IMG/VR virus record: IMGVR_UViG_3300020084_000003 | Span: 62,001-126,000 of that record | Reading direction: 5' to 3' (one strand) | DNA length: 64,000 bases | Part shown: in pieces, positions 34,800 through 64,000 of the stretch | Layout: each line of letters begins with the position of its first letter | How positions within the stretch are numbered: position 1 is the stretch's first letter | Notes under the pieces: model-generated | What the model was told of the DNA's origin: nothing | What the model saw: only the letters and a program-made list of their open reading frames with translations | Database searches by the model: none | Translations under genes and position numbers: made by a program

Positions 34800-36590
34800 A
34801 TGGTAAAGTTGTTTGGGTTTGAAATTAAACGCCAAGAAGATGAAGAAGATATTGAGAACGTAAAATCTTTTGCAACTCCTGTAAATGAAGATGGTGCAAT
34901 TAATATTGGAGCCGCATTGGGTGGTTCATATGGTCACATCTTCAATATGGATTCTACGTTTAAATCAGAATCAGACTTAATAACACAATATAGAACAATG
35001 TCACTCCAACCAGAGGTTTCCTTTGCAGTTGAAAACATTGTTAATGAAGCTATTTCCATCGACACAGAAGAAAATATTGTTAAAATAATTCTAGACGATG
35101 TTGAAGTAGGCGAGAAAACAAAAGCTAGAATTTATGAAGAATTTGAAGTAATTCTTAAACTTCTAAATTTCAGCAATAACGCATACGACATATTCCAGAA
35201 GTGGTTTGTAGACGGAAGAATAAACTATAACGTTGTAATTGATGAATCAAATCTAAAGCGCGGCATAGTTGAACTTGTTTACGTTGACCCAAGAAAACTA
35301 AGACTTGTTAAAGAAATCATGGAGATACCAGATAGAGAAGCTGGTATTGCCGTGACCACAAAAAAGATTAAAAACGAATATTTCTTGTATAACGAAAACG
35401 GTTTTGGAAATACAAACAACCCATCTATGACAGGTGCAGCGGGCGGATTATCTACCAACTATTCAACTGGCATGACAAATGATTCTATTAGAATTGCTAA
35501 AGACAGCGTTGTTAGAGTTCCATCTGGTTTGGTTTCAGAAGATAATGCTATGGTATTATCACATTTGCACAAAGCGATCAAGCCTCTAAACTTGCTAAGA
35601 TCACTTGAAGACGCAAACGTTATTTACACTATTACACGTGCGCCAGAAAGAAGAATTTTCTATATCGACGTTGGTAACTTGCCAACCAATAAAGCTGAAC
35701 AATATCTACACAATATGATGGTTAGACATAAGAATAAAGTAACTTATGACAACACCACAGGTCAAATTGCTGACGATAGACGCTTTATGACAATGACACA
35801 AGATTACTGGTTCCCTAGAAGAGAAGGCTCAAGATCAACTGAGATTGAAACCCTTCCGGGTAGTGGATCACTAAGCGATAATGACCAATTGGAATACTTC
35901 AAGAAAAATCTATATCAGGCGTTGTCAATACCTGCATCTAGATTTGATAGTGAAAACAACTACTCTTTGGGTAGAGTTACTGAAATGTCCAGAGAAGAAG
36001 TAAACTTTGGTAAATTCGTTAGAAGACTTAGAGCAAAATTCTCTGTTCTATTTGATAAGCTATTGGAAAGACAGCTTATTTTGAAAGGTGTTATTACACC
36101 GGATGAGTGGCCCACCATTCAAGAAAAAATGCGCTACGACTATATGAAGGATAACTACTTCGAAGAATTGAAGTCTATGGAAATCCTAAGAGAAAAAATT
36201 GCTATGTTCCAATCAATGGAAGAGCTAATAGGCAAACATGTTTCTACTCGTTGGGCTTATAGAAATGTTCTATTCATGTCAGATGATGAGATGGAAGAAA
36301 TGAGAGCAGAAATTGATGAAGAAAAAGAATTGGGTTATTATGAAGATAATAGTGGCGATACCAATATCATCATAGATCAAGATTCTGAAAAATATGTAGA
36401 CGGATTAGCTGGAACTGAGGAAGACGAAGAGGAAGAAGAAAATCCCGAAGAGGAAACCGAAGAAGAAGAATTGGTTGACGACGAGGAAGAAGAGGAAAAG
36501 CTAAATAGTAATGAGAAGAATAGAAAAAGATCAAAAGGTCTAAAGTCTAAATCGAAACCAAAGAAAGAAGAGGATAGCAAAGATGAGTAA
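34800..36590 (+). CDS. gp20: Portal protein gp20
   Basis: LFGFEI, WFVDGR, LHKAIKPLNLLRSLEDA..RAPERRIFYIDVGNLP, DYWFPRREG. Confidence 0.97.
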   Translation: MVKLFGFEIKRQEDEEDIENVKSFATPVNEDGAINIGAALGGSYGHIFNMDSTFKSESDLITQYRTMSLQPEVSFAVENIVNEAISIDTEENIVKIILDDVEVGEKTKARIYEEFEVILKLLNFSNNAYDIFQKWFVDGRINYNVVIDESNLKRGIVELVYVDPRKLRLVKEIMEIPDREAGIAVTTKKIKNEYFLYNENGFGNTNNPSMTGAAGGLSTNYSTGMTNDSIRIAKDSVVRVPSGLVSEDNAMVLSHLHKAIKPLNLLRSLEDANVIYTITRAPERRIFYIDVGNLPTNKAEQYLHNMMVRHKNKVTYDNTTGQIADDRRFMTMTQDYWFPRREGSRSTEIETLPGSGSLSDNDQLEYFKKNLYQALSIPASRFDSENNYSLGRVTEMSREEVNFGKFVRRLRAKFSVLFDKLLERQLILKGVITPDEWPTIQEKMRYDYMKDNYFEELKSMEILREKIAMFQSMEELIGKHVSTRWAYRNVLFMSDDEMEEMRAEIDEEKELGYYEDNSGDTNIIIDQDSEKYVDGLAGTEEDEEEEENPEEETEEEELVDDEEEEEKLNSNEKNRKRSKGLKSKSKPKKEEDSKDE

Positions 36591-37002
36591 ATCATTTCGC
36601 CAATTTGTCTCAGAGGTAGCACGTCCTGTAGCTGGCGATGAGATTGATTTCATGAACAAGCACGTCACAATATTGATAGATTACCCTATTGATGTTGAGG
36701 ATCAATTCACTGGCGGCGATATTAAAAAATTCACCAGACTTGCCGATTATAAGAACGGCAAGGATGTTCAAGTTTACGAAGCCAATTTGAACATTCAAGG
36801 TGAAGATGAAATTAATGACGCCGAAGAAGCACGTCACGATGCCCAAGAAGTTTTGAAAAAAATTATTGATGAAGCATGTGGTGACGACGAAGACCTTAAA
36901 GAAGAATATACTGAAATTCTATCACAACTTAGTGAAGAAAACATAAATTATGCTCTTGATAACGATATTGATCTAATTGATTTCGCTAAACGTTTCGTGT
37001 AA
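36583..37002 (+). CDS. Acidic hypothetical protein at the prohead-core (gp67/gp68) position
   Basis: Lies between portal and protease; MSKSFRQFVSE N-terminus; very acidic. Confidence 0.55.
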   Translation: MSKSFRQFVSEVARPVAGDEIDFMNKHVTILIDYPIDVEDQFTGGDIKKFTRLADYKNGKDVQVYEANLNIQGEDEINDAEEARHDAQEVLKKIIDEACGDDEDLKEEYTEILSQLSEENINYALDNDIDLIDFAKRFV

Positions 37003-37775: not shown

Positions 37776-37936
37776 TATAAATAATTTCATAGATTTGCGT
37801 TATTATAAATAATAGAAATATCTGAAATTATAAATAAAGTTAACTGTGGCAAACATCCGTCCTCATGATAGTATGTGAAGTCCATGTTTTGGTGACACTT
37901 TACGGTGAAAACTGGAAAAGTATAAATATATAAATA
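37776..37936 (+). promoter_or_regulatory. Cluster of five late-promoter boxes upstream of gp22
   Basis: TATAAATA at 37776, 37804, 37829, 37921 and 37929. Confidence 0.75.
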
Positions 37937-40373: not shown

Positions 40374-41483
40374 TTAGAACATTGGACTGTCTGGAACAGT
40401 AGTCGCAATCTCAGTATAGTGTAATAGTTCTAGTTTATTCACTACACCATCTGTTACTCTAATTGTTCCGTATCGTTTGAACCATGTTGAATAAATTCTG
40501 TCTAGAAAGATTTTAAGCTTTTCTTTATCTTGTTCAGATGCTTCCATTTCATCTGATACGCCTAGAAGAATTACCTCTTCAACCATTTCATGGTCAAACT
40601 TGATATGCTCAATGCCTGTTTTTGCTTCCATATATTTGTTAGTAATTCCGACTAATGAAAGATATGATATCGTGAGAATATCCCATTCAAGATAAGTCAT
40701 ACCAAGTTGGTCTTCATCTGAATTTGAAATGCCTAATCCGTCCGTAGGGACAACGCGCCAGAACTTTTCGGGCAGACCTAGCTCTTGTGCAATTACAGGA
40801 ATTTCTGTGGATTTGAAGAAGCTTTGTAGAGGGGCAAAGTCTCCCACATCACCGTTCACTGTGAATAAGCCTGCTGAATATTCTGAGAAATTGTCAGTGC
40901 TTACCACAATGCCATTTACAGACTTGGCAGCATCATACAGGTATGTCATACGCAGTCTAGCATATACATTTCCCCTACGTATATTGTAATCACTGGAATT
41001 TTCAGAATCTAATCCAATATCATCTACCATAACACTTGCTGCATAAGTCAAATCTTTGTAGTTGAGTTTAATGCCAAGAAATTCACACACTTCTTTTGCA
41101 AGATCGACTTCTTTTGGTTTTTGATTAATAGGAAGGGTATATGCGTGAATTTTAATGTCTGAGTTTTTTGCTTGTGCTGCTTTAAGAACGGCTAGAACGG
41201 TTGCGGAATCTGCGCCACCTGAAACGCCTACAACAAAGTTTGTAATGCCCGTTGCATCAACATAATCTATAACTGAACTTACAACATAATCCGTAATATC
41301 TTGCTCATGTCCATGATAAAAATATAGTGGTTTACAAACTACGCTTTTTAGCATATGGTGCATCCAAGGGCTTAGTGGTTCTGCTTCATTCTGTCGGGAG
41401 TTGTAAAGAATTCGTTCAAAAATCCCGTTGTCATATTCGATTGCAGCATTGGTAGCATTTTCTAGCATAGATTTTACATCCAT
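40374..41483 (-). CDS. nadE: NH3-dependent NAD+ synthetase (NadE family); ATG at 41483 preferred over TTG at 41498
   Basis: GVSGGADS PP-loop, GNVYARLRMTYLY, STDNFSE, GDVGDFAPL, PTDGL..SDEDQLG. Confidence 0.88.
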   Translation of the reverse strand: MDVKSMLENATNAAIEYDNGIFERILYNSRQNEAEPLSPWMHHMLKSVVCKPLYFYHGHEQDITDYVVSSVIDYVDATGITNFVVGVSGGADSATVLAVLKAAQAKNSDIKIHAYTLPINQKPKEVDLAKEVCEFLGIKLNYKDLTYAASVMVDDIGLDSENSSDYNIRRGNVYARLRMTYLYDAAKSVNGIVVSTDNFSEYSAGLFTVNGDVGDFAPLQSFFKSTEIPVIAQELGLPEKFWRVVPTDGLGISNSDEDQLGMTYLEWDILTISYLSLVGITNKYMEAKTGIEHIKFDHEMVEEVILLGVSDEMEASEQDKEKLKIFLDRIYSTWFKRYGTIRVTDGVVNKLELLHYTEIATTVPDSPMF

Positions 41484-41494
41484 GTGTCTTCCTT

Positions 41495-41995
41495 TCAAAT
41501 AAAATTTTCTAAGTAGTATTTAATCTCTGGTATCTGAGTCGCAAAATTAAATACTGGAATGTTATACAACTTGGCGATGCGAATCGCTTGGGCTGTCCCA
41601 CCTGTCATCTCACCATTTGGCGTCCAGCACAATATGAAAGATGCAGGCGTTTTAAGATCATCTCCTAACACCTGATTTGCATTTCTTGACATATATAACT
41701 GACCGTCTTCGTTGAGCCTGTTTGGTTTCGGATGCAGCTTTTTGGTGTAGTAGTCGTTAAAGGGTGGAATGATATAATCCTTACCGTTGACGAATTTTTT
41801 CTGAAACCCATCGAACGGAAGGTATATCCGTCTACCCTCTGGTGGTGCGCCTTCTTCAAAGAAAGAATCTGCACCAGCCGCACCGCCAGACCTTAGTATA
41901 TAACCTTTCTCATAAAGAAAAGTTGCAGTGTTTGCCATGATAGATTTGAACTTAGTAGGAGTCGCGCGACTTCCTATTCCTGCATAATACTTCAT
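41495..41995 (-). CDS. SLOG/DprA-like Rossmann-fold nucleotide-binding protein
   Basis: YAGIGSRATP, LRSGGAAGADSFFE, RNANQVLG, GGTAQAIRIA..IPVFN. Confidence 0.75.
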   Translation of the reverse strand: MKYYAGIGSRATPTKFKSIMANTATFLYEKGYILRSGGAAGADSFFEEGAPPEGRRIYLPFDGFQKKFVNGKDYIIPPFNDYYTKKLHPKPNRLNEDGQLYMSRNANQVLGDDLKTPASFILCWTPNGEMTGGTAQAIRIAKLYNIPVFNFATQIPEIKYYLENFI

Positions 41996-53865: not shown

Positions 53866-54603
53866 TTATTCTCCATGTTGAAAAATTCCCTCATATACCC
53901 ATCCCATAATGGATTTTTTTCTTTGATTAGGACTTATACAATCCCCAACTCTTCCGCGCTTACATTTTAAAAAAGATTGTATTTCTTTTCTAGTCATGTA
54001 AACAGAACCTTTTTCTGGATGGGTCCATATATATTTGGTAAAATCTTCACCACTTCTAAAGTTAGGTTCAAATTCATTTCCAACTTCGCCTGCAAAATAC
54101 CACCCTCTAACAGACTTACAGTGTTTCCTCTTAATTACACAAGAGTTGACATTACATTTATAACCGCCTAAAAACAAAGTCATGCCATATTGGGATTTAT
54201 AAATCTTTTCTTTAGTCTTTTTGTTAATCCACACATATATTTTATCATCGTAACGTGGGTGACTTTCTGCATTTCCTAATCCGATACCTCCCGGTATCTT
54301 ATTCATACATAATTTATCTTTAAACCACAAATCACCAATTATTATATTTTCATTCAATAAATTGCTACTATGGCTATCGTTCATCATTATTATTTCTTTT
54401 ACAAACTCAGGATTATTAGTAAAATGTCTTCTTCTAGCTACAGGAGGTTTATGCTTAAAACCATTTATAACCATCGCAAGGTTCCTTATCCAATCACCAC
54501 TACCAAAATAATCATGGTCTTCGGGATTCTCGAAACAGGAACTTCTACCTATATAATATTCGCCAGTATTTGTATTAGTTATTTTATATAGGTAAAAATT
54601 CAT
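53866..54603 (-). mobile_element. Free-standing GIY-YIG (Seg-like) homing endonuclease
   Basis: FYLYKITNTNTGEYYIG..YFGSG, conserved E and N, followed by repeated small DNA-binding modules (KSVRGW / KSIMGW). Confidence 0.8.
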
Positions 54604-54604
54604 A

Positions 54605-54820
54605 TCATTCCTTTACGTCTGTAAATGCCTCTTTCCACTCATCTTGAGTGATCCCAGATATTATAAATTCAACATCTTCGTCATTAAGATATGGCATGGC
54701 ATCATGTATACTCATATAACCCAAGTTATATGTTATCCAATCATCAGGATTTACGGGAATGTCTCTAATTCTTTCAATTCCTGTTATTACACTTGTTCTC
54801 TTGATTCTCATTTTAACCAC
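54605..54820 (-). CDS. Hypothetical protein
   Basis: IHDAMPYLNDEDVEFIISGITQDEW conserved-looking phage motif. Confidence 0.6.
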   Translation of the reverse strand: MVKMRIKRTSVITGIERIRDIPVNPDDWITYNLGYMSIHDAMPYLNDEDVEFIISGITQDEWKEAFTDVKE

Positions 54821-54850
54821 CTTATTATGACAAATTTATAATCATGGTAT

Positions 54851-54923
54851 TATTTATACCACAACATATGCTGCTTGTCAAGCAAAAAATCACCGCATAT
54901 ATAATAGGTTAATGGTATAAATA
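54851..54923. promoter_or_regulatory. Divergent late promoters
   Basis: TATTTATA at 54851 (minus) and TATAAATA at 54916 (plus). Confidence 0.65.
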
Positions 54924-54953
54924 AAGTTACATGTGAACAAATAAGGAATCGTT

Positions 54954-55487
54954 ATGAGAATTGCAGCCATTGACTACAGTATGACCTCTCCCGCGATATG
55001 CGTAGCAAATACAGAAAAACCTCTATCTTTTGAAAATTGTTTTTTCTACAACATTTCAAATATTAAAAATAAGCCATATAGAGAAAATATTCATTACACT
55101 GAAATGAAATACATCACTGACGATGAAGAAAGATTTGACTATCTTTCAAATTGGGCAGTTGAAGCACTCCAAGTCAACAATGTTGAAAAGGTTATCATGG
55201 AAGGTTATTCCTTCGGAAGCAAATCTAGCCGACTATTTCAAATTGGAGAAAATGGCGGTGTCCTGAAACACAAGATTTTCAGAATGAATATACCTTTGAT
55301 AAAGCTTGCTCCGACAGAAGTCAAGAAGGTTTTTCATGGAAAAGGTAACGCTTCTAAAGAAGATATGATTGAAGCACTTTTCACCAAAGAAGGTATTAGG
55401 TTGGGAGATAATGCAAAGTCGCCCATAGGAGATATAGTCGATTCTTATGCTATATTATATTCTGCTGTAACCAGAGGATTAATATAA
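54954..55487 (+). CDS. RuvC-like Holliday junction resolvase
   Basis: IAAIDYS, MEGYSFG, PTEVKK..GKGNASKEDM, DIVDSYAI catalytic acidic residues. Confidence 0.8.
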   Translation: MRIAAIDYSMTSPAICVANTEKPLSFENCFFYNISNIKNKPYRENIHYTEMKYITDDEERFDYLSNWAVEALQVNNVEKVIMEGYSFGSKSSRLFQIGENGGVLKHKIFRMNIPLIKLAPTEVKKVFHGKGNASKEDMIEALFTKEGIRLGDNAKSPIGDIVDSYAILYSAVTRGLI

Positions 55488-55518
55488 AAGAGGCAGTGTT
55501 TCATCACTGCCTCTTTTT
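55486..55518. terminator. Bidirectional terminator
   Basis: AAAAGAGGCAGTG-TTTCAT-CACTGCCTCTTTT between convergent genes. Confidence 0.85.
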
Positions 55519-55777
55519 ATTTCAAGTTTCCTAGACCTTGCATATTTTCGGAAACATAAATTTCGTATTCAGTGAAGCCTCCAATATGTTTACCATTAAC
55601 AAAAATTTGTGGGACTGTTTTTGCATTTGGAACCAAGGCAAGTAATTCTTGTTTTGTGTCGCCTTCGGAAACGTCTTTCCACTCATACTTAATTTGGTTT
55701 ACGTTATTCAACTTCTTAGCTTCATCGCAATAAAAGCATCCGGGTCTTCCGAAAACTATAACATTTGCACTCATCAT
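55517..55777 (-). CDS. Glutaredoxin
   Basis: CFYC, TVPQIFVNGKHIGGF. Confidence 0.92.
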   Translation of the reverse strand: MMSANVIVFGRPGCFYCDEAKKLNNVNQIKYEWKDVSEGDTKQELLALVPNAKTVPQIFVNGKHIGGFTEYEIYVSENMQGLGNLK

Positions 55778-56007
55778 TTACTCCTATAATATTCTATAAT
55801 ATGATTTATTATCATTTGCACTTCTTCTTTGGGTATCTTACCCTGTGAATATACATCAGGATTTAGCCTGCATATTCCACAATCTTCCATATAAGCATCG
55901 ACGTAAATGTAAGACTTGCTCTCTTCGTCATATATGGTTATTACTAACGTTTTCTCTGGTGTGTTGGTTCTACTCGGTAGTATCTTTGAAATAATCTTGT
56001 TTATCAT
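55774..56007 (-). CDS. Hypothetical protein
   Basis: ORF overlapping its neighbours in the operon. Confidence 0.5.
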   Translation of the reverse strand: MINKIISKILPSRTNTPEKTLVITIYDEESKSYIYVDAYMEDCGICRLNPDVYSQGKIPKEEVQMIINHIIEYYRSK

Positions 56008-56167
56008 TTAGATACTTTTCACCTTCCGCTGTCACGACCCATTCCCCATTATCATGAAAAATATAACCGTTACCTTTAAGACGGTTGATGTATGGAGTAT
56101 GTTTGTTTGACACCATTATATTTTTGTCTTTTAATTTTTGCAACAACTCTAAGCTCTTGTTATCCAT
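55970..56167 (-). CDS. Small hypothetical protein (possible winged helix)
   Basis: INRLKGNGYI..WVVTAEGEKYL resembles a wHTH wing motif. Confidence 0.45.
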   Translation of the reverse strand: MDNKSLELLQKLKDKNIMVSNKHTPYINRLKGNGYIFHDNGEWVVTAEGEKYLNDKQDYFKDTTE

Positions 56168-56513
56168 CTAAAGATATTCCTTCAACGTTGTAAGACATGA
56201 TATCATCATAATCAAATATTCTGTGATTTATACCATTCACTTCTACATCCAAGAGCAGATGGCTTATAATTATGACGTTTTCAAACATGAAAATATCTTT
56301 CAATTCTTGGTATTCTTTGGCTTTAACTACTACCAAACAATCTTTCAGAACGCAGCTTTTAAATTGTATCTTCTTATCTTTGATGTTTCCGAAGTCGAGT
56401 ATTCCATCCATATTTCTATTTTTAATTACGAAATCATTATTAAATTTATTAGTATGTATTAAATATCTATCTGTGCAAAAAACATCTCTTGTTATAAAAA
56501 TGTTATCTTCCAT
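56160..56513 (-). CDS. Hypothetical protein (ATG 56513 preferred over 56582)
   Basis: ORF; the shorter start avoids an 80-bp overlap with the MTase. Confidence 0.5.
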   Translation of the reverse strand: MEDNIFITRDVFCTDRYLIHTNKFNNDFVIKNRNMDGILDFGNIKDKKIQFKSCVLKDCLVVVKAKEYQELKDIFMFENVIIISHLLLDVEVNGINHRIFDYDDIMSYNVEGISLDG

Positions 56514-57048
56514 AAAATTGTATATTGTCCTCTTCACTTTTATTTGGAACAAACAAATACCAGCATACATCGTCTTTGCCACTCATGGTTGTTCCTTCAA
56601 TCCATTTCATTCTTCCTACAGTTACAATTTTTGTGCAGTATTTTTGTAAATATGGGGCAGCTTTCATGGTGAACATCCAGTTCGCATCAAACAAAAACCA
56701 TGTGGGTTTCATTGAAGCAAAATGTTCTATTGAGTGATGTAGCAAATCTCTTGACCAAGGTGGGTTCGAAATGATAAACTCCGATTCGGAAAGATCAGCC
56801 TCAGTAACGTTTATATATGATTTTTCGATGAATGTCAAGTCTGTAATGTTATGTTCGTAATCTGGCTCTATATCAGATGCGTATACACATTTTCCTTCAA
56901 GTTGATTGATTAAATCGCCTCTTCCGCAAAAGGGTTCTGCATATGTATAGGTTTCTGGTAAAAATGGCTTTATAGCCTTTCCCGCTTTAGGATCAAATGT
57001 TCTGTAATAATCCTTAGCAATTCTGTCAAAATCTGACCGCTTACCCAT
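56503..57048 (-). CDS. DNA N6-adenine/N4-cytosine methyltransferase
   Basis: DYYRT, EPFCGRG SAM-binding motif, ISNPPW catalytic motif. Confidence 0.8.
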   Translation of the reverse strand: MGKRSDFDRIAKDYYRTFDPKAGKAIKPFLPETYTYAEPFCGRGDLINQLEGKCVYASDIEPDYEHNITDLTFIEKSYINVTEADLSESEFIISNPPWSRDLLHHSIEHFASMKPTWFLFDANWMFTMKAAPYLQKYCTKIVTVGRMKWIEGTTMSGKDDVCWYLFVPNKSEEDNIQFYGR

Positions 57049-57101
57049 TATAAATCTCCATAATAATTTTATATATGGATTATTTATAACAGAATCTAGT
57101 A

Positions 57102-57207
57102 AATTATGATTGGGCGAAGCCCAATTTTGCGAAGCAAAATTTCATGATTCTTCTTACTTGACAGGACTCATGAAACCCTATAGAGTCTTATAAGAATCAT
57201 GAGTCCT
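57102..57207. repeat. Cluster of inverted repeats including two GCGAAGC mini-hairpins
   Basis: ATTGGGC-GAA-GCCCAAT (57109-57125), AATTTTGC-GAA-GCAAAATT (57123-57141), AGGACTCATGA/TCATGAGTCCT (57163-57173/57197-57207). Confidence 0.85.
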
Positions 57208-57305
57208 ATAATTTAATCACGAATCACAAGATTCATTATATCACAGGTTGTATTTTTGTCAAGTCCCTAAATAAACCTTGACATATTGTCGCAGTGTGAT
57301 AATAT
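57158..57305. promoter_or_regulatory. Divergent/convergent sigma70-like promoters
   Basis: +: TTGACA(57158)-N17-TAGAGT; -: TTGACA(57262-57257)-N16-TATAAT; +: TTGACA(57278)-N16-TAATAT upstream of pnuC. Confidence 0.6.
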
Positions 57306-57341
57306 GGACTCAATCGAATCACTATAACAAGGAGTTTTGTT

Positions 57342-57995
57342 ATGACTATAAAGAAAGACGATTTTCAATTAAATATTATGCTAATTTGCGTAGGTTTTAT
57401 TCTTACGGTTTTAACTCATTATATTTGTGTCATGTTGGGAGTTCAACTACCAGACATTAATATGCTTGAGTTTGTTGCTGTTGCTACTAGCTATACATGC
57501 ACTATCATGTTCGCTATGCAGAAGAGAGCAGCATACTTTTACGGAATTATCAGCACGTTTTTTCTGTGCTGGTTCTTTGCAACACAAGGAATTTTCGCGT
57601 TAGCAATTTTTAACGGTGTTCTAGTTATCAGTTTAATTTACGGATACTGGCGTTGGGGTCCAGATGGACGACCGATTCCAGTTACAAATATCAAAGGTTT
57701 CAAATCATTTGCCGGTTACGGAATGTTTACAGTTATTATCGCAGGTTTATTCCTTCTGCTTGTGGGCGCTTCTTCCAAGATCGACATTTTTCTGGCATCG
57801 GCTTCCGCAACCGCGCAGCTTATGCTAGACAATAAAAAGCTGGAAAACTGGCTTGTATGGATGGTCATTAACGTGTTCTCTATCGTTTTCTTCATTCAAA
57901 GCGGCTTCTGGCTATTGGCAATTCAATTTATGCTATTCTTGCTGAACGCTATTTTCGCGTATTTCTCTTGGAGAAAGGGTCTAGTAAATGTCTAA
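57342..57995 (+). CDS. pnuC: Nicotinamide riboside transporter PnuC
   Basis: Multi-TM; YGYWRW, AQLMLDNKKLENWLVWMVINVFSI motif. Confidence 0.88.
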   Translation: MTIKKDDFQLNIMLICVGFILTVLTHYICVMLGVQLPDINMLEFVAVATSYTCTIMFAMQKRAAYFYGIISTFFLCWFFATQGIFALAIFNGVLVISLIYGYWRWGPDGRPIPVTNIKGFKSFAGYGMFTVIIAGLFLLLVGASSKIDIFLASASATAQLMLDNKKLENWLVWMVINVFSIVFFIQSGFWLLAIQFMLFLLNAIFAYFSWRKGLVNV

Positions 57996-59049
57996 AGATG
58001 AAAAAATTCATGGCCTAATTCTCGGAACGTTCATGCCCTTTCATAAGGGGCATGAACTACTAATCAACTTCGGCAAAGAATATACTGAACAATTTGGGCG
58101 TGGTCGCCTTCTGGTAATTCTTTCATCTCGCAGCAATGAACCCATTTCAGGTAATATGCGTCTGGATGCAATCAGAAAGACTTTTGGAAACGATGTGTCG
58201 ATTTTTCATCATATTGACGATGATGCTCCACAAAATCCAAAAGACAAAGATGACGTTAAATTCTGGGAATACTGGAAGAAAGTTATCACCAAAGCTGCCA
58301 TTCAAAGTAATTTAAATCCATACGCAATAAAGTATGTATTTTCATCTGAAAACTATGGTGACAAAGTAGCAGAAATTATTGATGCAACTCATGTCAAATT
58401 TGACCAAGCTAGAACGGCTGTCCACGTAAGCGGAACGCAAATCAGAAACAACCCTTTGTCAAATTACCAACACATGAACGCGCACATGATTACAAATCTT
58501 CGTCGCAGGTATGTTTTGTTTGGAGCCGAATCGGTTGGCAAGACTACTTCTCTAAAATATCTAGGCAATAGTCACTACGGGTCACATACCCTACCTGAAT
58601 ATGCCAGACCGTTTTTAGAAGAATTGGAAGACAAGTCTCCGTCCGAAAAGAACATGTGCAGTATCTTCATGGCGCAGCATTCTATGGAAATTGCCGCAAT
58701 GAAACAAGTCGGCGGTTCTCTACTGACGTTTATGGATACTGATATCATGTCCACTTTTGGATATGCAAGGCTGGTAAAGATGAAAACAAATCAGTTTGAA
58801 CATTTGGTTCCAATTGATTTTAGAAGAACGTATTTCGTTCTGTCACAAGATGAGGTTCCTTTTGAAAAGGACATTCTCAGATATGGTGGCGATGTAAGAG
58901 AAACCAAGGATAGTTTTTGGATCAATCTGCTAGAAGAATTTAATCTAAGATACTTTGTTGTCAAAGGCGATTTCAGTAGCAGGATGGACCAAATTAACGC
59001 TATAATAGCAAAAGATTTCAAGAAGGACTTTCACTTTAACAGAGAGTAG
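57988..59049 (+). CDS. nadR: NadR-type bifunctional NMN adenylyltransferase / ribosylnicotinamide kinase (no HTH)
   Basis: GTFMPFHKGH, FSSENYG, VSGTQIR; GAESVGKTT P-loop, PEYAR, DTD. Confidence 0.88.
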   Translation: MSKDEKIHGLILGTFMPFHKGHELLINFGKEYTEQFGRGRLLVILSSRSNEPISGNMRLDAIRKTFGNDVSIFHHIDDDAPQNPKDKDDVKFWEYWKKVITKAAIQSNLNPYAIKYVFSSENYGDKVAEIIDATHVKFDQARTAVHVSGTQIRNNPLSNYQHMNAHMITNLRRRYVLFGAESVGKTTSLKYLGNSHYGSHTLPEYARPFLEELEDKSPSEKNMCSIFMAQHSMEIAAMKQVGGSLLTFMDTDIMSTFGYARLVKMKTNQFEHLVPIDFRRTYFVLSQDEVPFEKDILRYGGDVRETKDSFWINLLEEFNLRYFVVKGDFSSRMDQINAIIAKDFKKDFHFNRE

Positions 59050-59058
59050 GAAAATCTT

Positions 59059-59409
59059 ATGAAACAAGATTTCTTGATACACAAACTAGATATCACTATA
59101 AAAGTGGTCACTGATAATATGCTGGAAGTATCGTGGTATGGTTTCAACACCCGCCACGATATTGACGGTATGGTATTGGTTCAGACAGATGATGACCACA
59201 ATGATATATTCATGACAATAGAACATGATATGCATCCAATGGAAATTGGAGACAATACATCTGTCAACGTTTATCTGAAAAATCCAAATAAACGCAAAAG
59301 CGTATCCAAAGATGCGTGTCCTATGCTTAAAAAACTAGTAAACGAAATACAATTCAGGACACGCAAGCTTCATTTTTCAGGACTCGTCACGTCCGAAGTA
59401 GATATGTAG
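59059..59409 (+). CDS. Hypothetical protein
   Basis: ORF with AGGA SD following nadR. Confidence 0.55.
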   Translation: MKQDFLIHKLDITIKVVTDNMLEVSWYGFNTRHDIDGMVLVQTDDDHNDIFMTIEHDMHPMEIGDNTSVNVYLKNPNKRKSVSKDACPMLKKLVNEIQFRTRKLHFSGLVTSEVDM

Positions 59410-59760
59410 TAGTGTAATCACAACACCCAATAGCAGCAATGCTACGTGGAAATATGATACAGTATAAAGGGCAGCACCATACATAACGGTGAATATGTCC
59501 TCAAGACAGTCTACCTTATTACCACCATTAATATAGTCAATAAATTCTTTGACGCCGTATAACGCAAATGTTACCATCAGCATAGTTGCATATGTCATCG
59601 GAAAGATGTATATGGACACATGGGCTAGAATCCACATGAACGCACCGCCTAGCGCACCGTGCCAAACGCCTTCTGCCCCGCGTCTATAAGACTGTTCCGC
59701 TGGACCAAACTTGTTTGATGGTGTGAATAGTTCTTTGAAAAATTTAGCGATTGTCTTCAT
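59377..59760 (-). CDS. Hypothetical membrane protein
   Basis: AGGAG SD; three to four hydrophobic segments; isolated minus-strand gene. Confidence 0.55.
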   Translation of the reverse strand: MKTIAKFFKELFTPSNKFGPAEQSYRRGAEGVWHGALGGAFMWILAHVSIYIFPMTYATMLMVTFALYGVKEFIDYINGGNKVDCLEDIFTVMYGAALYTVSYFHVALLLLGVVITLLHIYFGRDES

Positions 59761-59811
59761 TTTCTTCTCCTGTTAATGTGTAGACTAAGGTATTTATTGG
59801 AAGGAGTTTTT

Positions 59812-60132
59812 ATGTCTAGGGTAATCAAACCAGAAATACACGCTATAGATTATCTGGAAGAAATTGTATCATACACAAAATATTTTTTAAATGCCGATTG
59901 CGCTGAAACTAAAAGCGATAGCTTTATCTATATAATGCATAGATGGGAAAATGCTGTAAGTGTTTTTTCAAAAAATCAAAAAATTGTAAATTATGATGTG
60001 AAAAAAATTGTAATAGAAAACAGGTATATAGGATTCCGAATAAATCATATCGCAGTTAATCATGAGAAAACGCATAACATACAAGTAGAATATAAAGATT
60101 GTGTGAATTTAATAACAGGAGAGATATTGTGA
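59812..60132 (+). CDS. Hypothetical protein (Cys-motif family, partial motif)
   Basis: AAGGAG SD; C-terminal IQVEYKDCVN. Confidence 0.55.
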   Translation: MSRVIKPEIHAIDYLEEIVSYTKYFLNADCAETKSDSFIYIMHRWENAVSVFSKNQKIVNYDVKKIVIENRYIGFRINHIAVNHEKTHNIQVEYKDCVNLITGEIL

Positions 60133-60497
60133 GTATTATTTTGGCTTTATTTCTTTTTAGCGGCATTGAGTCAAATGCAGATTTAAAAGAATACACCTAT
60201 GATCTAGATGGTGGTATCTGCACTCATGATGTGTCTGCCAGTTTTAACCCTCAAACAATTGAAATAAATGGGGGAGGAATTTATATGGGTAATGGCGGTA
60301 ATGTTAGATTTAGCGTCACCTTGGGTAATGGATTGATTATATACGGTGTGAGTCAATTTGGTTCAAATCCTAACTATGTCTACTATTATACCCTGAACCC
60401 AGAGACAGGAGATATTGGGGCATTTCAAACAAATAACCCAGAGGAACTTAAAGAAGAAGGAGCGGTTGATACGATGCAGTTGAAACCATGTAGATAA
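60129..60497 (+). CDS. Hypothetical exported protein (GTG start)
   Basis: AGGAG SD; short hydrophobic signal-like N-terminus. Confidence 0.5.
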   Translation: MSIILALFLFSGIESNADLKEYTYDLDGGICTHDVSASFNPQTIEINGGGIYMGNGGNVRFSVTLGNGLIIYGVSQFGSNPNYVYYYTLNPETGDIGAFQTNNPEELKEEGAVDTMQLKPCR

Positions 60498-60498
60498 T

Positions 60499-60861
60499 AT
60501 GAAACTTGAATACCAAAAAAACTTCGATGAGAAAATATTTAATAACTATGTAAAACAATCAATATTTGGAAATAATGAATTTTCCGAATTACATTTTAAT
60601 GATTGTAAGATAACTGTTTTGAATAGGTTATCATACGAAAAAACTATACGTTATGTAAACAAAAAAAATCTTGAGAATACACCTGTATTGACCCTTAGAA
60701 ATGTAGATGTATCAAGTGGGCCTGTAATATATGTGAGATATTATGATAGCAGTGAAAGTTATATAAAATCATCATATCCTTGTTACTATCACTCTATAAT
60801 AAAACCAGTAACCAGAAGGCACTCAGCAATAGCCTGTATAATGGAAGGAAATGCAACATGA
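60499..60861 (+). CDS. Hypothetical protein
   Basis: Tightly packed ORF. Confidence 0.55.
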   Translation: MKLEYQKNFDEKIFNNYVKQSIFGNNEFSELHFNDCKITVLNRLSYEKTIRYVNKKNLENTPVLTLRNVDVSSGPVIYVRYYDSSESYIKSSYPCYYHSIIKPVTRRHSAIACIMEGNAT

Positions 60862-61088
60862 CTAAACAACCAAGAGTATATAGAGGAATTGGATTTTTTG
60901 GAGTTCTGACAATCGTATTGATTGTTTTGAAATTGGCCGAAGTCATCAGCATTTCATGGTGGTGGATTGTGGCTACATTTTTTGCACCTTGGATCATCGG
61001 ATTTAGCATAATCGCATTCGGATTTATGGCTGTAGGACTTATATTTCTCGGTGCTTTGATTTTGGATTTGATTACAGGTAAACGGTGA
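60858..61088 (+). CDS. Small two-TM membrane protein (start at ATG 60858)
   Basis: GFFGVLTIVLIVLKLAEVISISWWWIV motif common in phage membrane proteins. Confidence 0.65.
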   Translation: MTKQPRVYRGIGFFGVLTIVLIVLKLAEVISISWWWIVATFFAPWIIGFSIIAFGFMAVGLIFLGALILDLITGKR

Positions 61089-61089
61089 C

Positions 61090-61578
61090 ATGATACTGGA
61101 TAGATCAGAACTAGGGAAGCAGATATTAGAAATGAGCTATACTGGTGAATGCTCATTTAGAAATAACATTGGCTTTTATAAAACCGATAATGGTAGTCTA
61201 GATTTTTATGAAGCTTATGGATTGTCTGATAGTATGCTAGATGATTTGGGTTTTGGGTGTGAAGATTATTTAAATTTCAAAAGCGATGAGTTTGTCCCAA
61301 GAGAAAAAGCAGAAAATTCATATGAAAGTAAAGCGCCTCTGTATAGATATGTAAACATACGTTTCAAGAAGCCATTCTATATTAGAGTGAAAAGAAGTAG
61401 ATTCACACATACATCAACAAACGGAAATATAAGCAGCTTCAATTTGCTAGATAAGTTTGAATTGTTTATCAGAGTTAGATTTGAGGGATGCCAATTTGAT
61501 GAATTGCCTGAAAAATACACGTTCTGTAGCTATAAAAATTGTTATGCGGATGATAAACTGATAGGAGATTTACAATGA
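61090..61578 (+). CDS. Hypothetical protein (Cys-motif family)
   Basis: KPFYI..IRVRFEGCQF..SYKNCY. Confidence 0.6.
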   Translation: MILDRSELGKQILEMSYTGECSFRNNIGFYKTDNGSLDFYEAYGLSDSMLDDLGFGCEDYLNFKSDEFVPREKAENSYESKAPLYRYVNIRFKKPFYIRVKRSRFTHTSTNGNISSFNLLDKFELFIRVRFEGCQFDELPEKYTFCSYKNCYADDKLIGDLQ

Positions 61579-61793
61579 ATATTTTATACCTGACAGATAG
61601 AGAGGCTACTAGTTACGGTCAACCTTCCGTTGGCAGTATCGCCTATATCAGCATTGATCTAATAAAGATGGCAATCAAGGAACATGCTGACTGGATTTTG
61701 GACTATGACGAAGACATTCATACAAAGGAGGAATTTCATTTTCATTCCAGTGCATTCGTTGCGCTGACGAACCTTTTGAAAGAAGTCAAGTAA
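61575..61793 (+). CDS. Hypothetical protein
   Basis: AGGAG SD; overlaps its neighbours. Confidence 0.5.
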   Translation: MNILYLTDREATSYGQPSVGSIAYISIDLIKMAIKEHADWILDYDEDIHTKEEFHFHSSAFVALTNLLKEVK

Positions 61794-62248
61794 TGTCAGG
61801 CAAAGAAATCTATAGTTATTTCATAAGCAAGTTTAAAGTGCCATATGGCACTGTAACTGAAAAACACACATACGAAGATATTGGACAAGTTACAACAAAA
61901 GTATCAATTAATGATGTAATTAAAATTATGGCAGTCGATATAGATGTTCGTGTGAAAGACGTTAACGAAAGTATTAATATACCGTTTCCTAATGGGTTGC
62001 GTAAGATTAAACTGGTTCCTAGAAAAAGTATCAGTATTGACAATATGTTAATTTCTTCAACTTTCCCTATAAACTTTTTCAATATGTATATTGAATATAC
62101 ACCATTTTTTATAGTGAACTTGATTGATGCTGAAAGAAGTATTATTAAAAGTCATTATATAAGATGCTACTTTTCTAATTGCGTAGTGCAGGGGAAAAAT
62201 TTGGAGATGCTGGAATATGACAACTGCGAAATCATCACTGCCACTTGA
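61793..62248 (+). CDS. Hypothetical protein (Cys-motif family)
   Basis: TPFFI..IRCYFSNCVV..EYDNCEI. Confidence 0.6.
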   Translation: MSGKEIYSYFISKFKVPYGTVTEKHTYEDIGQVTTKVSINDVIKIMAVDIDVRVKDVNESINIPFPNGLRKIKLVPRKSISIDNMLISSTFPINFFNMYIEYTPFFIVNLIDAERSIIKSHYIRCYFSNCVVQGKNLEMLEYDNCEIITAT

Positions 62249-62272
62249 CATTACCCCTCTGTATGATAAAGT
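62245..62272 (+). promoter_or_regulatory. Sigma70-like promoter
   Basis: TTGACA-N16-TAAAGT. Confidence 0.5.
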
Positions 62273-62366
62273 GTCATCAGGCATGGACCCATACCAAATT
62301 GGTGAAGGCTACAGAGAAACCATCTTTCACAAAAAAGGTGGTTTGTTTTAACTTGAAAAAGAAATA

Positions 62367-62717
62367 GTGTTGTCTTGTGTAAGATGGCACATTGGAAAAA
62401 TGTTTATAATAAGCATCGAAATAAATGGGTTTGTAAAAGAAAAGAACATATCTATACCTATGCCAGATGGCATGGAGCCTATTGTATTTGAGAACAAAGA
62501 TTACAAAAATATCTATACACCTGAAAACTTTGTGTATGACAAGGAAGTGGTCATTAAAAATAGAAACCTTGTGAGTGGAGTGATTTTTCGATTCTCTAGA
62601 AACTCCGGTTCTGAAATAATAACTGCGCCAATGATATATCAAGATTGCATTTATTATACAAGTCACAAATATATACCTTTAACAATTAATAGTATACAGG
62701 AAAACGACAATGGATAG
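62367..62717 (+). CDS. Hypothetical protein (Cys-motif family; possibly the 3' part of an interrupted ORF starting at 62283)
   Basis: PMIYQDCIY; in frame with a 22-codon upstream ORF that ends in TAA at 62349. Confidence 0.5.
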   Translation: MLSCVRWHIGKMFIISIEINGFVKEKNISIPMPDGMEPIVFENKDYKNIYTPENFVYDKEVVIKNRNLVSGVIFRFSRNSGSEIITAPMIYQDCIYYTSHKYIPLTINSIQENDNG

Positions 62718-63129
62718 TATTGAAGAAGCTATTAAAGAAATATATAAAACGACCTCTTTGAAGTTTGAATATAATGGCATCCATTGTGCAATTCACAAGA
62801 AGCTGTTTAATGCGGAACTTTATGTGAATTTGGATCAGGCCGAAGATACAGAAAAGAGAATAGGCAAATATATTGGCTTTGATTTTGAATACGATATAAA
62901 CAAGCATTTTCTTCCCAATACGAACATACAAATTCAAAAGAAACCAAATTTTGGCCTTGTTTTTGTCAACGAAGTAAAGCCCATTGAAATAAACCTTACG
63001 CTTGTGAGAAAGGAAGTAGAATATAAAACGAACACGTTATATAAAGGATGTGTTTTCAAAAGATCACAATGTTTAAATCCTGCGCGGTCTATTTTTGATA
63101 ACTGTGAAGGGGTAGATGGTTTAGAATAA
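62710..63129 (+). CDS. Hypothetical protein (Cys-motif family)
   Basis: KPIEI..TLYKGCVF..IFDNCEG. Confidence 0.6.
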   Translation: MDSIEEAIKEIYKTTSLKFEYNGIHCAIHKKLFNAELYVNLDQAEDTEKRIGKYIGFDFEYDINKHFLPNTNIQIQKKPNFGLVFVNEVKPIEINLTLVRKEVEYKTNTLYKGCVFKRSQCLNPARSIFDNCEGVDGLE

Positions 63130-63149
63130 CAACTCAATAGGATATAGAT

Positions 63150-63587
63150 ATGGAAAACGAGGTTTCAAAACTTATAGGTCGTTTCTTGGAAATTTCAAAA
63201 AAGAAGAACGATGATTATGAAGAATATTCTACCAGTGTCAAATCAGACGTTGAACCCCAGATGGACATTGCTTTAGAATTTTGGTATGATTTTTGCGAAA
63301 TTGTCGTAACGATATATTGTCATGCGTCAGTTTATGATGCTGAAAAATTCATAGTAGAATTGCCTAGTGGTGAAACGCTGTATTACAACCATTACTCTAC
63401 AAATACGGTCAACATTAGAAACATTGACACGAACGGATATGATATTCTCTTCTTTGTTGTATTTGAAAAAGAATACGAAGAAAAACAAGCAAAAGAAAGG
63501 TTAAATATCAAATATAAAAACTGCGTTGTAAACAATTATATGCTCTCTGATAATTCAGTAGAAGGATGTGAATTTTATGAAAGGTGA
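63150..63587 (+). CDS. Hypothetical protein (Cys-motif family)
   Basis: LNIKYKNCVV..SVEGCEF. Confidence 0.6.
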   Translation: MENEVSKLIGRFLEISKKKNDDYEEYSTSVKSDVEPQMDIALEFWYDFCEIVVTIYCHASVYDAEKFIVELPSGETLYYNHYSTNTVNIRNIDTNGYDILFFVVFEKEYEEKQAKERLNIKYKNCVVNNYMLSDNSVEGCEFYER

Positions 63588-63978
63588 TAGTAAAAAACTG
63601 GTGGATATTTACACTAGGCAAATGCAAGGGCTTGATACATCTCCATATAGGATATTGGTTAATCAATCGAAATATTTGGACGTTTATTCTATGGGGGTCG
63701 AAGATATCACTATGGAAGAGTTTGGAATTTCCAATATAGACCATGAACAGTTTAATCTGAAAACCATAAAAGACTCATTTCAAAAACCTGAATTTCATAG
63801 CTTTGAAGTTGATAACTTGATTCTCATATACCCATTAAGATTGACATTTTTTGTGGGAACTATAGAATACCATTTGAATGTAAAACATAATAACTGCATA
63901 TTCAAATTAGGCCAGAAGAAATACTATGAAACTATTAACGAGCATAATTGTGTATGGTGTTTAGATGATGTTGGGTAA
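63568..63978 (+). CDS. Hypothetical protein (Cys-motif family)
   Basis: YPLRL..LNVKHNNCIF..EHNCVW. Confidence 0.6.
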   Translation: MNFMKGDSKKLVDIYTRQMQGLDTSPYRILVNQSKYLDVYSMGVEDITMEEFGISNIDHEQFNLKTIKDSFQKPEFHSFEVDNLILIYPLRLTFFVGTIEYHLNVKHNNCIFKLGQKKYYETINEHNCVWCLDDVG

Positions 63979-64000
63979 AACTGAAAACAAGCTACTTGAA

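What the first reader, a model, noticed from the sequence alone, without database searches (positions are those of the whole stretch)
59812..63978. Cryptic tandem family of highly diverged small proteins sharing a C-terminal Cys motif
Seen: seven ORFs of ~105-160 aa with no obvious nucleotide similarity end in [YFH]-x-[NDG]-C, usually repeated 13-19 aa later: EYKDCVN (59812); RFEGCQF..SYKNCY (61090); YFSNCVV..EYDNCEI (61793); IYQDCIY (62367); LYKGCVF..IFDNCEG (62710); KYKNCVV..SVEGCEF (63150); KHNNCIF..EHNCVW (63568). Four also share an upstream P-hydrophobic-x-hydrophobic strand (KPFYI, TPFFI, KPIEI, YPLRL). FNDCKI (60499) and FKSCVLKDCLV (56160) may be outliers. Inference: an ancient expanded paralog array with variable N-termini and a shared docking or oligomerisation tail, i.e. 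a diversified effector/anti-defence library. It may continue past the window.
Basis: partly seen in the sequence, partly recalled or inferred. Interest (0 to 1): 0.72.

Follow-up and report, generated by a model that had tools for sequence, protein, structure and literature searches.

The report
Orphan tandem small-protein family in phage
An uncultivated freshwater T4-like giant phage carries ten or eleven very diverged tandem copies of one small protein that has no detectable relative elsewhere; the family is real, but its job (probably handling the host early in infection) is only inferred.

Summary
All quoted motifs are at the stated places. The array continues about 1.2 kb past the window with three more members (L, M, N). 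All three carry the same C-terminal Cys motif, which is an out-of-sample check.

Support for one family:
- The motif is in 10 of 11 array ORFs, against 3-5% of the phage's other genes.
- Pairwise scores beat shuffles (L-M p 3e-15; J-N, K-M and G-N 5e-5 to 3e-4).
- In leave-one-out profile searches, 8 of 11 members rank 1-5 among about 1,244 ORFs.

Homology runs the full length: a conserved N-terminal helix motif, a poorly conserved middle, and a C-terminal half with three copies of a strand-turn-strand motif ([FY]-x-N-[C/M/I]-x-hydrophobic). So "variable N-termini plus a shared tail" is wrong in detail.

No relative was found in 1.84 billion or 5.8 billion proteins, or in Pfam, PHROGs, PADLOC, NCBIfam, PDB or fold libraries.

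The genes form two tightly packed operon-like blocks in the lowest-GC part of a 285-kb T4-like genome. They have sigma70-like promoters and no T4 late promoter nearby.

Best reading: a lineage-specific, rapidly diverging accessory family, probably expressed early and binding host targets. That function is inference only. Interest is moderate.

The parts
59812..60132 (+). A, 106 aa: family member (short form, one Cys motif, EYKDCV)
   Evidence: ATG preceded by GGAGG. A profile of the other eight core members ranks it 1st of 1,246 ORFs, E 9e-4 to 5e-3.
60129..60497 (+). B, 122 aa: not a member; N-terminus looks like a signal peptide (MSIILALFLFSGIESNA)
   Evidence: GTG start overlaps A's stop (GTGA). 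Profile rank 559-824. No Pfam hit.
60499..60861 (+). C, 120 aa: possible degenerate member
   Evidence: It keeps the mid motif LTLRNVDV..GPVIYV and two C-terminal Cys 18 residues apart. Profile ranks are unstable, from 7 to 907.
60858..61088 (+). D, 76 aa: not a member; hydrophobic, two predicted membrane spans
   Evidence: Sequence and GRAVY of 1.41. JGI gene call.
61090..61578 (+). E, 162 aa: probable member
   Evidence: It has the N-terminal ILEMSY, the mid YRYVNIRFKKPFYIRV (compare M: FAHFKNMHFKKPIVIRA), and RFEGCQF plus SYKNCY. It ranks 3-18 with the core profile, but fails the full-length leave-one-out test.
61575..61793 (+). F, 72 aa: not a member; acidic, no Cys
61793..62248 (+). G, 151 aa: member (subgroup with H, J, N)
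   Evidence: G-N p 3e-4 against shuffles. Leave-one-out rank 2. It shares INIPFPNG with H's ISIPMPDG.
62245..62399 (+). Spacer between the two gene blocks: sigma70-like site TTGACA-16-TAAAGT (62245-62272), then a hairpin (62317-62344)
   Evidence: hairpin about -14 kcal/mol; the spacer is unique in the genome.
62400..62717 (+). H, 105 aa from ATG 62400 (116 aa if GTG 62367): member, short form with one Cys motif
   Evidence: Leave-one-out rank 1. JGI calls give 105 aa or 85 aa.
62710..63129 (+). I, 139 aa: member (subgroup with K, L, M)
   Evidence: Leave-one-out rank 1, E 0.01. I-K p 0.005 and I-M p 0.008.
63150..63587 (+). J, 145 aa: member
   Evidence: J-N p 5e-5. A profile of the I/K/L/M C-termini ranks J 1st of 1,250. 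It has N-terminal FLEISK.
63568..63978 (+). K, 136 aa (133 aa from ATG 63577): member
   Evidence: K-M p 2e-4. Leave-one-out rank 2.
63965..64000 (+). Start of L (142 aa, runs to 64393 beyond the window). It is followed, outside the window, by M (64378-64794, 138 aa) and N (64807-65226, 139 aa). In locus L002: L 4966-5394, M 5379-5795, N 5808-6227.
   Evidence: L-M are 31% identical, p 3e-15. All three carry the Cys motifs. The array ends at N, where a repeat-punctuated, higher-GC region starts.

Best explanation
**What is there.** This is a lineage-restricted family of at least ten small, soluble proteins of 105-162 aa (A, E, G, H, I, J, K, L, M, N; perhaps C). It arose by repeated tandem duplication inside an accessory region of an uncultivated freshwater T4-like phage of 285 kb.

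**Shown**
- The members are homologous over their whole length.
- They share an N-terminal amphipathic-helix motif (…ILE-h-SK…).
- The middle is poorly conserved and rich in indels.
- The C-terminal half of about 60-80 aa holds three copies of a strand / two-residue turn / strand motif, [FY]-x-[N/D/G]-[C/M/I]-x-hydrophobic. The last two copies carry the Cys residues.
- The genes sit in two tightly packed, start/stop-overlapping blocks (A-G and H-N).

**Inferred**
- The Cys residues are buried core positions next to tight turns rather than a catalytic or obligatory metal site.
- The blocks are transcribed from host-type (sigma70-like) promoters, that is, before or independently of late gene expression.
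- The family is a panel of binding proteins on one scaffold whose variable middle gives each copy a different host target (host takeover or counter-defence), as assumed for other orphan genes in plastic regions of T4-like genomes.
For: **One family**
- Motif enrichment: 10/11 against 3-5% of other genes, with shuffles reaching at most 4/11. The three members outside the window give an out-of-sample confirmation.
- Pairwise Smith-Waterman against shuffles: L-M 3e-15, J-N 5e-5, K-M 2e-4, G-N 3e-4.
- Leave-one-out profile ranks are 1-5 of about 1,244 for A, G, H, I, K, L, M and N, while the four control neighbours rank 62-559.

**Full-length homology**
- N-terminal motif in 7/11 against 1/395.
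- Collinear alignments and region-wise conservation.
- Three-fold motif and Cys spacing of 15-21 residues.

**Structure**
- The AF2 model of M (pLDDT 61, C-terminal half 63-84) shows a helix, an alpha/beta part and then strands. Each motif forms a long strand, a turn and a short strand.

**Real genes**
- The annotated frame is best for codon usage in 14/14 ORFs.
- Gene calls are identical on independent contigs.
- Start and stop codons overlap or are closely spaced, and ribosome-binding sites are present.

**Orphan status**
- Searches found only the phage's own proteins.
- No family, PDB or fold match.

**Context**
- T4-like core genes.
- The array is the lowest-GC stretch of the genome.
- No TATAAATA late promoter in or just upstream of the array, although 29 such sites sit in front of genes elsewhere, including portal, protease, scaffold and capsid.
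- Sigma70-like sites are 3x enriched in intergenic DNA and occur at 57278, 62245 and 63841 on the + strand.
- Plastic regions full of orphan genes are described for T4-like phages (PMC4122927).
Against: - The link between the two subgroups (I/K/L/M and G/H/J/N) is weak by profile methods alone. hhalign gives P = 0.09, and a G/H/J/N profile ranks I, K, L and M only 146-275 of 1,250.
- Function is pure inference: no homologue, no expression data (no RNA run holds the sequence) and no confident fold.
- Promoter timing rests on consensus matches only. T4's own internal-protein genes also lack a TATAAATA box just upstream, so a missing late promoter does not prove early-only expression.
- The J model was unusable (pLDDT 38), so a shared fold was not shown by modelling.
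- Eight of ten members have three or more Cys in the last 35 residues, and Cys is 2.4x enriched. A metal site in most members is therefore not excluded.
Confidence: 0.5

Rival explanations
1. The proteins are internal head proteins in the manner of T4 IPI/IPII/IPIII. The conserved N-terminal helix would be a capsid-targeting sequence cut by the prohead protease after (I/L)-L-E. The mature proteins would be packaged and injected with the DNA to meet host defences.
For: - L, M, E, J and I carry LLE / ILE / ILE / FLE / IKE at residues 10-14.
- By alignment with T4 gp23, the phage's own capsid protein would be cut at SLLE|T, and its delta domain holds several xLE sites.
- T4 IPII and IPIII start MKTYQEFIAE, and T4's IP locus is a classic hypervariable locus (cited in PMC4122927).
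- T4 ipII and ipIII also lack a TATAAATA box just upstream, so the missing late promoter here is not decisive.
Against: - The P1 Glu is not conserved: K has D, N has N, G has S, and H lacks the helix.
- The motif differs from the one clear T4-like targeting sequence in this genome, MSKSFRQFVSE on the gp68-like core protein. That sequence is unique in the genome.
- T4 internal proteins share only the targeting peptide, whereas these proteins are homologous throughout.
- There is no late promoter within the 5.4-kb block.
Confidence: 0.12
2. There are two unrelated small-protein families (I/K/L/M(/E) and G/H/J/N(/A)) that merely share a convergent C-terminal Cys-containing motif.
For: - Profile-profile comparison of the subgroups gives P = 0.09.
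- Cross-subgroup profile ranks are modest.
- The tree is unresolved.
Against: - J and N share the N-terminal h-h-E-h-S-K motif with E, I, K, L and M.
- The hhalign alignment is collinear over residues 11-141 against 3-143.
- A profile of the I/K/L/M C-termini ranks J first of 1,250.
- The joint profile finds A at E about 1e-3.
- The mid N-h-x-h and P-h-x-h motifs are common to both subgroups.
- Members of both subgroups interleave in one array.
Confidence: 0.1
3. The C-terminal Cys cluster is a metal (zinc) site, and the proteins are small metal-dependent regulators or nucleic-acid or protein binders. This is a sub-hypothesis about the tail and is compatible with the main explanation.
For: - E, G, I, K, L, M and N have 3-4 Cys in the last 35 residues; N has C-x-C…C-x4-C.
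- Cys makes up 2.5% of residues, against 1.0% in the rest of the genome.
Against: - A and H have one Cys and J has two.
- No fourth ligand is conserved, and the spacing varies between 15 and 21 residues.
- The first copy of the same motif has Met, Ile or Leu where the later copies have Cys, which fits a buried hydrophobic position.
- No zinc-finger or zinc-ribbon family matched.
Confidence: 0.15
4. The copies are decaying or functionless duplicates (junk ORFs).
For: - Divergence is extreme.
- 9 of 11 differences in a 97-98% identical groundwater variant change the amino acid. These contigs have about 2x depth, so errors are possible.
Against: - All copies are intact, tightly packed, in the right frame for codon usage, and keep three motifs.
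- The sequence is identical in six other lake contigs.
Confidence: 0.05

Closest known systems
Orphan gene clusters of the hyperplastic regions of T4-like phages (Comeau, Arbiol and Krisch 2014, PMC4122927; Arbiol et al. 2010 as cited there)
   Same: Small genes of unknown function lie in a non-core region of a T4-like genome. They sit between conserved modules, have host-type promoters, and diverge fast.
   Different: Here ten or eleven genes are paralogues of one another. The genes abut or overlap, without the repeated promoter/stem-loop (PeSL) cassettes between them. Such repeats start only just after the array.
T4 internal proteins IPI/IPII/IPIII and the hypervariable IP locus
   Same: Small, diverse proteins with a conserved N-terminal helix containing a hydrophobic-x-Glu site, in a T4-like phage.
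   Different: The N-terminal motif differs from MKTYQEFIAE and from this phage's own MSKSFRQFVSE. The Glu is not invariant. Homology extends through the whole protein. Packaging is untested.
Beta-solenoid / leucine-rich-type repeats (BspA/TpLRR-type LRR, pentapeptide repeats)
   Same: A repeated short motif has an Asn or Cys next to alternating hydrophobic residues ([FY]-x-N-C-x-F). The weakest fold hits for residues 56-138 of the M model are Qnr, antigen 43 and TLR5 (Z 2.2-2.5).
   Different: No Pfam LRR or pentapeptide model matches at E <= 1. The register (N-2, N+1, N+3) and the spacing (15-30 residues) do not fit either repeat, and the Z scores are at noise level.
SEA domain (eukaryotic mucin-type repeat protein P0006)
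   Same: It is the only non-self hit of the 1.84-billion-protein search (E 1e-6), and it contains FLNCVF.
   Different: It is an artefact. Fourteen near-identical repeats each score 3-7 bits, and a single unit scores E about 1e4-1e5.

Membership tests
T4-type internal head proteins (capsid-targeted, protease-processed) | N-terminal capsid-targeting peptide of the MKTYQEFIAE type | tested here: not met
   T4 IPII and IPIII were read from NC_000866. Only the gp68-like protein at 36583-37002 has such a peptide in this genome. The family motif is h-h-E-h-S-K at residues 8-17.
T4-type internal head proteins (capsid-targeted, protease-processed) | Conserved (L/I)-x-Glu cleavage site near the N-terminus | tested here: inconclusive
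   It is present in E, I, L and M, and as FLE in J. It is absent in K (LVD), N (YVN), G and H; A is ambiguous.
T4-type internal head proteins (capsid-targeted, protease-processed) | Protein present in the virion in processed form | not testable with these tools
   The phage is uncultivated and no proteome exists.
PeSL-flanked cassettes of T4-like hyperplastic regions | Repeated composite stem-loop plus early-promoter element between the ORFs | tested here: not met
   Most genes overlap or are 1-20 nt apart. The single 151-nt spacer is unique in the genome, and its hairpin follows the promoter-like site rather than preceding it. Repeated promoter/hairpin elements begin after N.
BspA-type LRR / pentapeptide-repeat beta-solenoids | Match to the family profile (Pfam LRR or pentapeptide models) and regular repeat spacing | tested here: not met
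   No such Pfam hit at E <= 1 or 0.1. Motif spacings are 26-30 and 15-21 residues. Fold Z scores are <= 2.5.
Known defence-system proteins (PADLOC) and NCBIfam/PHROG families | Profile match above noise | tested here: not met
   The best hits are E 0.028 (PADLOC), 0.005 (NCBIfam, 16.6 bits against a 390-bit cut-off) and 0.008-0.5 (PHROGs), each for a single member.
SEA domain | A single domain matching the family profile | tested here: not met
   One repeat unit of P0006 scores 9-13 bits, E about 1e4-1e5 at library size. No array protein hits Pfam SEA.

The most novel reading that the evidence does not exclude
The array is a phage-encoded repertoire built on a previously unseen small fold. One scaffold (N-terminal helix plus a triple Cys/Asn hairpin core) displays a hypervariable middle, and each copy neutralises a different host defence or takeover target. 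Alternatively, the copies are packaged and injected after cleavage at the (I/L)LE site. Either way, this would be a multi-copy counter-defence toolkit with no homologue among about 15 billion known proteins.
Probability: 0.2. Interest if true: 0.7.

Novelty: new member of a known kind. Interest (0 to 1): 0.4.

Why it matters
Tandem families of fast-evolving small genes in large phages are where new host-takeover and counter-defence proteins have repeatedly been found. Here, ten or more copies of one orphan scaffold sit in a single genome. This gives a natural set of variants showing which positions are structural (the helix motif, the Asn/Cys hairpins) and which are free to vary. That makes the family a practical target for structure determination and binding screens. 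By itself, however, the finding is an example of a known phenomenon in an uncultivated phage with an unknown host, so its immediate value is modest.

Tried and rejected
- **Sequence searches.** All returned only the phage's own proteins:
  - a word-seeded search of 5.8 billion proteins with J and with the 10-member profile;
  - full HMMER of the I/K/L/M profile against 1.84 billion representatives. Its only outside hit was a repeat-inflated SEA protein, rejected;
  - an IMG/VR pattern scan;
  - ORFs around distant NadR and capsid homologues.
- **Family libraries.** Pfam, PHROGs, PADLOC, NCBIfam and PDB sequence profiles gave nothing above noise.
- **Structure.** The J model was unusable (pLDDT 38). 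The M model was moderate (pLDDT 61) but had no match in PDB, AFDB clusters, BFVD, ESM Atlas or the VIA wide search (best Z 3.5). Atlas feature leads (ubiquitin-like/PB1 for M, nothing for J) are below the tool's own trust level.
- **Homodimer prediction for M.** The tool gave no answer.
- **In-genome searches.** Searches from L+M alone, or from either subgroup alone, found no further member elsewhere in the 285-kb genome. A few other ORFs with a tail motif (for example genome 254353-254790) were not picked up by any profile.
- **Global hhalign mode.** It failed; local mode gave P 0.09.
- **Tree.** It was unresolved.
- **RNA.** No RNA family in 54000-64000, and no RNA-seq run holds the sequence.
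- **Closest phage relatives.** The closest capsid relatives are only 61-75% identical and mostly on short contigs, so synteny could not be compared.
- **Gene-pair idea.** I considered a repeated two-gene unit (I-J, M-N) and dropped it, because the order of subgroup members along the array fits it no better than chance.

Full report
**Where the window lies.** The window is bases 62001-126000 of a 284,776-bp virus record that is rated complete. Its baseplate, terminase, portal, scaffold and capsid genes are of the T4 type. The capsid protein is 61-65% identical to those of Stenotrophomonas phage DLP6, the Sinorhizobium phiM12 group and the Methylophilales Melnitz phages. The closest uncultivated relatives reach 75%. 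The same sequence occurs, 100% identical, in six other contigs (JGI and Logan assemblies). The sequencing runs that hold it are lake-water metagenomes, and a 97-98% variant occurs in one groundwater run. So this is an uncultivated freshwater T4-like phage with a large genome and no close sequenced relative.

**The observation.** Start codons can be refined as follows:

| ORF | Refined start | Note |
|---|---|---|
| A | ATG 59812 | behind a GGAGG |
| B | GTG 60129 | overlaps A's stop |
| D | 60858 | |
| H | probably ATG 62400 | |
| K | ATG 63577 or GTG 63568 | |

The array does continue past the window. L (63965-64393), M (64378-64794) and N (64807-65226, extrapolated window coordinates; locus L002) end in DYTNCVF…DKDCIW, DYTSCIF…KTDCIY and MINCVC…FKNCEI.

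**Is it more than chance?**
- The pattern [YFH]x[NDGS]C lies in the last 45 residues of 10 of 11 array ORFs. It does so in 2.8% of the other 395 genes and 5.0% of those of similar size.
- Shuffled family sequences never gave more than 4 of 11 in 2,000 trials.
- The pattern was fitted to the window, so the fair test is the three unseen members. All three have it.
- Pairwise Smith-Waterman scores against shuffles give L-M p 3e-15, J-N 5e-5, K-M 2e-4 and G-N 3e-4, with K-L, I-K and I-M at 4-8e-3.
- In leave-one-out profile searches against all 1,254 ORFs of the genome, A, H, I, L and M rank first, G and K second, N fifth and J 21st. The four neighbouring control ORFs rank 62-559.
- A profile of the eight core members finds A at E 9e-4 to 5e-3 and E at rank 3-18.
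- C is unstable (rank 7 to 907). The minus-strand ORF at 56160 is not supported.
- No member was found elsewhere in the genome.
- All 14 ORFs of the block score best in their own frame for the phage's codon usage.

**Anatomy of the proteins.**
- A motif hydrophobic-hydrophobic-[E/D/N]-hydrophobic-[S/Y/A]-[K/T/Y] sits at residues 8-17 (ILEMSY, IKEIYK, FLEISK, LVDIYT, LLEMSK, ILEHSK, YVNMAK). It is in seven members from both subgroups, and in 1 of 395 other genes.
- Column conservation is lowest in the middle: mean BLOSUM62 of 0.18, against 0.51 for the N-terminal part and 0.62 for the C-terminal part.
- The C-terminal half holds three copies of one motif, [FY]-x-[N/D/G]-[C/M/I/L]-x-hydrophobic, each preceded by alternating hydrophobic residues:
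  - Copy 1 (for example FAHFKNMHF, YRYVNIRF, VLKNLAF) has Met, Ile or Leu where copies 2 and 3 have Cys.
  - Copies 2 and 3 are 15-21 residues apart.
- The moderate AlphaFold model of M (pLDDT 61; 63-84 in the C-terminal half) places each copy as a long strand, a tight turn and a short strand. An N-terminal helix and an alpha/beta part precede them.
- I therefore read the Cys residues as buried positions flanking tight turns. This is inference. A metal site in the members with three or four Cys is not excluded.
- The proteins are soluble and mildly acidic to neutral.

**One family or two?** Members fall into I/K/L/M (with E) and G/H/J/N (with A).
- The direct profile-profile link is weak (hhalign P 0.09, though collinear over the full length).
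- Cross-subgroup profile ranks are mixed.
- Several points make a single family much more likely than convergence:
  - the shared N-terminal motif;
  - the shared mid and C-terminal motifs;
  - J ranking first with the I/K/L/M C-terminal profile;
  - A being found by the joint profile.
- The tree is a star with saturated branches, so "ancient" and "fast-evolving" cannot be separated. L-M is the only recent duplication.

**Relatives elsewhere.** None was found in any of these:
- the word-seeded search of 5.8 billion proteins with J and with the 10-member profile;
- HMMER of the I/K/L/M profile over 1.84 billion representatives;
- the IMG/VR scan;
- Pfam, PHROGs, PADLOC, NCBIfam and PDB profiles.

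The one outside hit, a 1,880-aa eukaryotic protein of 14 near-identical SEA repeats, is an artefact of summed weak scores. One unit scores 9-13 bits. The M model has no significant structural neighbour.

**Context and timing.**
- The genes form two blocks, A-G (59812-62248) and H-N (62400-65226). Start and stop codons overlap or lie 1-20 nt apart.
- A 151-nt spacer separates the blocks. It carries a sigma70-like site and a hairpin.
- Upstream lie pnuC and a nadR-like gene behind near-consensus sigma70-like sites.
- The array is the lowest-GC stretch of the genome (0.32-0.34). It ends where a 22-kb higher-GC region with repeated promoter/hairpin elements begins.
- T4 late promoters (TATAAATA) are clearly functional in this phage: 29 of 51 lie within 80 nt upstream of same-strand genes, including portal, protease, scaffold and capsid. 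None, even with one mismatch in a sensible place, serves the array.
- Sigma70-like sites are three times enriched in intergenic DNA.
- Together this points to early or host-polymerase transcription, but only from consensus matches. No RNA run holds the sequence.

**What it most likely does.** The features are those of the accessory orphan genes that fill the plastic regions of T4-like genomes and are thought to adapt the phage to its host (PMC4122927). I commit to a panel of early, soluble binding proteins on one scaffold, with specificity set by the variable middle, aimed at host takeover or counter-defence. My confidence that this is one real paralogue family is about 0.9. My confidence in the functional reading is about 0.4-0.5.

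**The main rival: packaged internal proteins.**
- In favour:
  - several members carry (I/L)LE at residues 10-14;
  - the capsid protein's inferred maturation site is SLLE|T;
  - T4 IPII and IPIII start MKTYQEFIAE, and their genes also lack a TATAAATA box just upstream.
- Against:
  - the Glu is not conserved in K, N, G or H;
  - the motif differs from the one T4-like targeting peptide in this genome;
  - homology runs the whole length.

**Other points.**
- The homodimer test of the "oligomerisation tail" idea gave no answer.
- In the groundwater variant, 9 of 11 differences change the amino acid. This hints at weak constraint, but the contigs have about 2x depth and the sample is tiny.

**Verdict.** This is a new orphan family of a known kind of phage feature. 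It is of moderate interest, mainly as a well-defined target for structure and binding work.

Noticed in passing
window 57342-59049 and 40374-41498 (-): An NAD salvage set: pnuC (NMN transporter, Pfam E 1e-30), an overlapping nadR-like NMN adenylyltransferase/kinase (31-37% identical to those of Sinorhizobium, Agrobacterium and Caulobacter phages), and an NAD synthetase-like gene next to the capsid gene.
   Followed up: partly
window 57049-57341: A divergent promoter region. It has a perfect TTGACA-16-TATAAT on the minus strand (57262-57235), and two near-consensus sites on the plus strand (57158 and 57278) in front of pnuC.
   Followed up: partly
window 60129-60497, 60858-61088, 59377-59760 (-): Non-family genes lie inside and beside the array. 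One is a small protein with a signal-peptide-like start (B). One is a 76-aa two-span membrane protein (D). One is a 127-aa membrane protein on the opposite strand whose 3' end overlaps the ORF at 59059-59409. None has a family match.
   Followed up: partly
window 62249-62399: This is the only sizeable spacer in the array. A sigma70-like site is followed by a strong hairpin (62317-62344) and a possible 22-codon ORF (62284-62352). The spacer is unique in the genome.
   Followed up: partly
L002 6225-10001 (genome 127.2-150 kb, beyond the window): Directly after the last family gene, a 22-kb region of higher GC begins (0.42-0.49 against 0.32-0.36). It is punctuated by repeats of GGCAAAAGAACAAACCGTGAAC…TTGACA and by AAAAAGCCCCGAAGGGCTT hairpins, which resemble the PeSL promoter/terminator cassettes of T4-like phages. 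It holds several small paralogue clusters.
   Followed up: partly
window 36583-37002: A 139-aa protein lies between the portal and prohead protease genes. It starts MSKSFRQFVSE, close to the T4 capsid-targeting peptide MKTYQEFIAE, and is the only such N-terminus in the genome. It has no tblastn match in the phage collection.
   Followed up: partly
window 7358, 15173, 32151-32180, 34127, 34755, 37015, 37921-37929, 38946 and others: T4-type late promoters (TATAAATA) lie 20-50 nt upstream of structural genes. Across the genome, 29 of 51 occurrences sit in front of same-strand genes.
   Followed up: yes
window 9564-15134 and 15217-20841: Two adjacent giant ORFs (1,856 and 1,874 aa) are paralogues; the first carries DUF4815. 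A third giant ORF (1792-7341, 1,849 aa) has a weak baseplate-wedge match.
   Followed up: no
window 53866-54603 (-) and six other places in the genome: A seven-copy family of 205-313 aa proteins is scattered over the genome. The N-terminus looks GIY-YIG-like by eye, but there is no Pfam hit at 1e-4.
   Followed up: no
window 59800-63867 (run X12): A groundwater metagenome from 2024 holds short contigs 96.5-100% identical to parts of the array. Of the 11 listed differences, 9 change the amino acid.
   Followed up: partly
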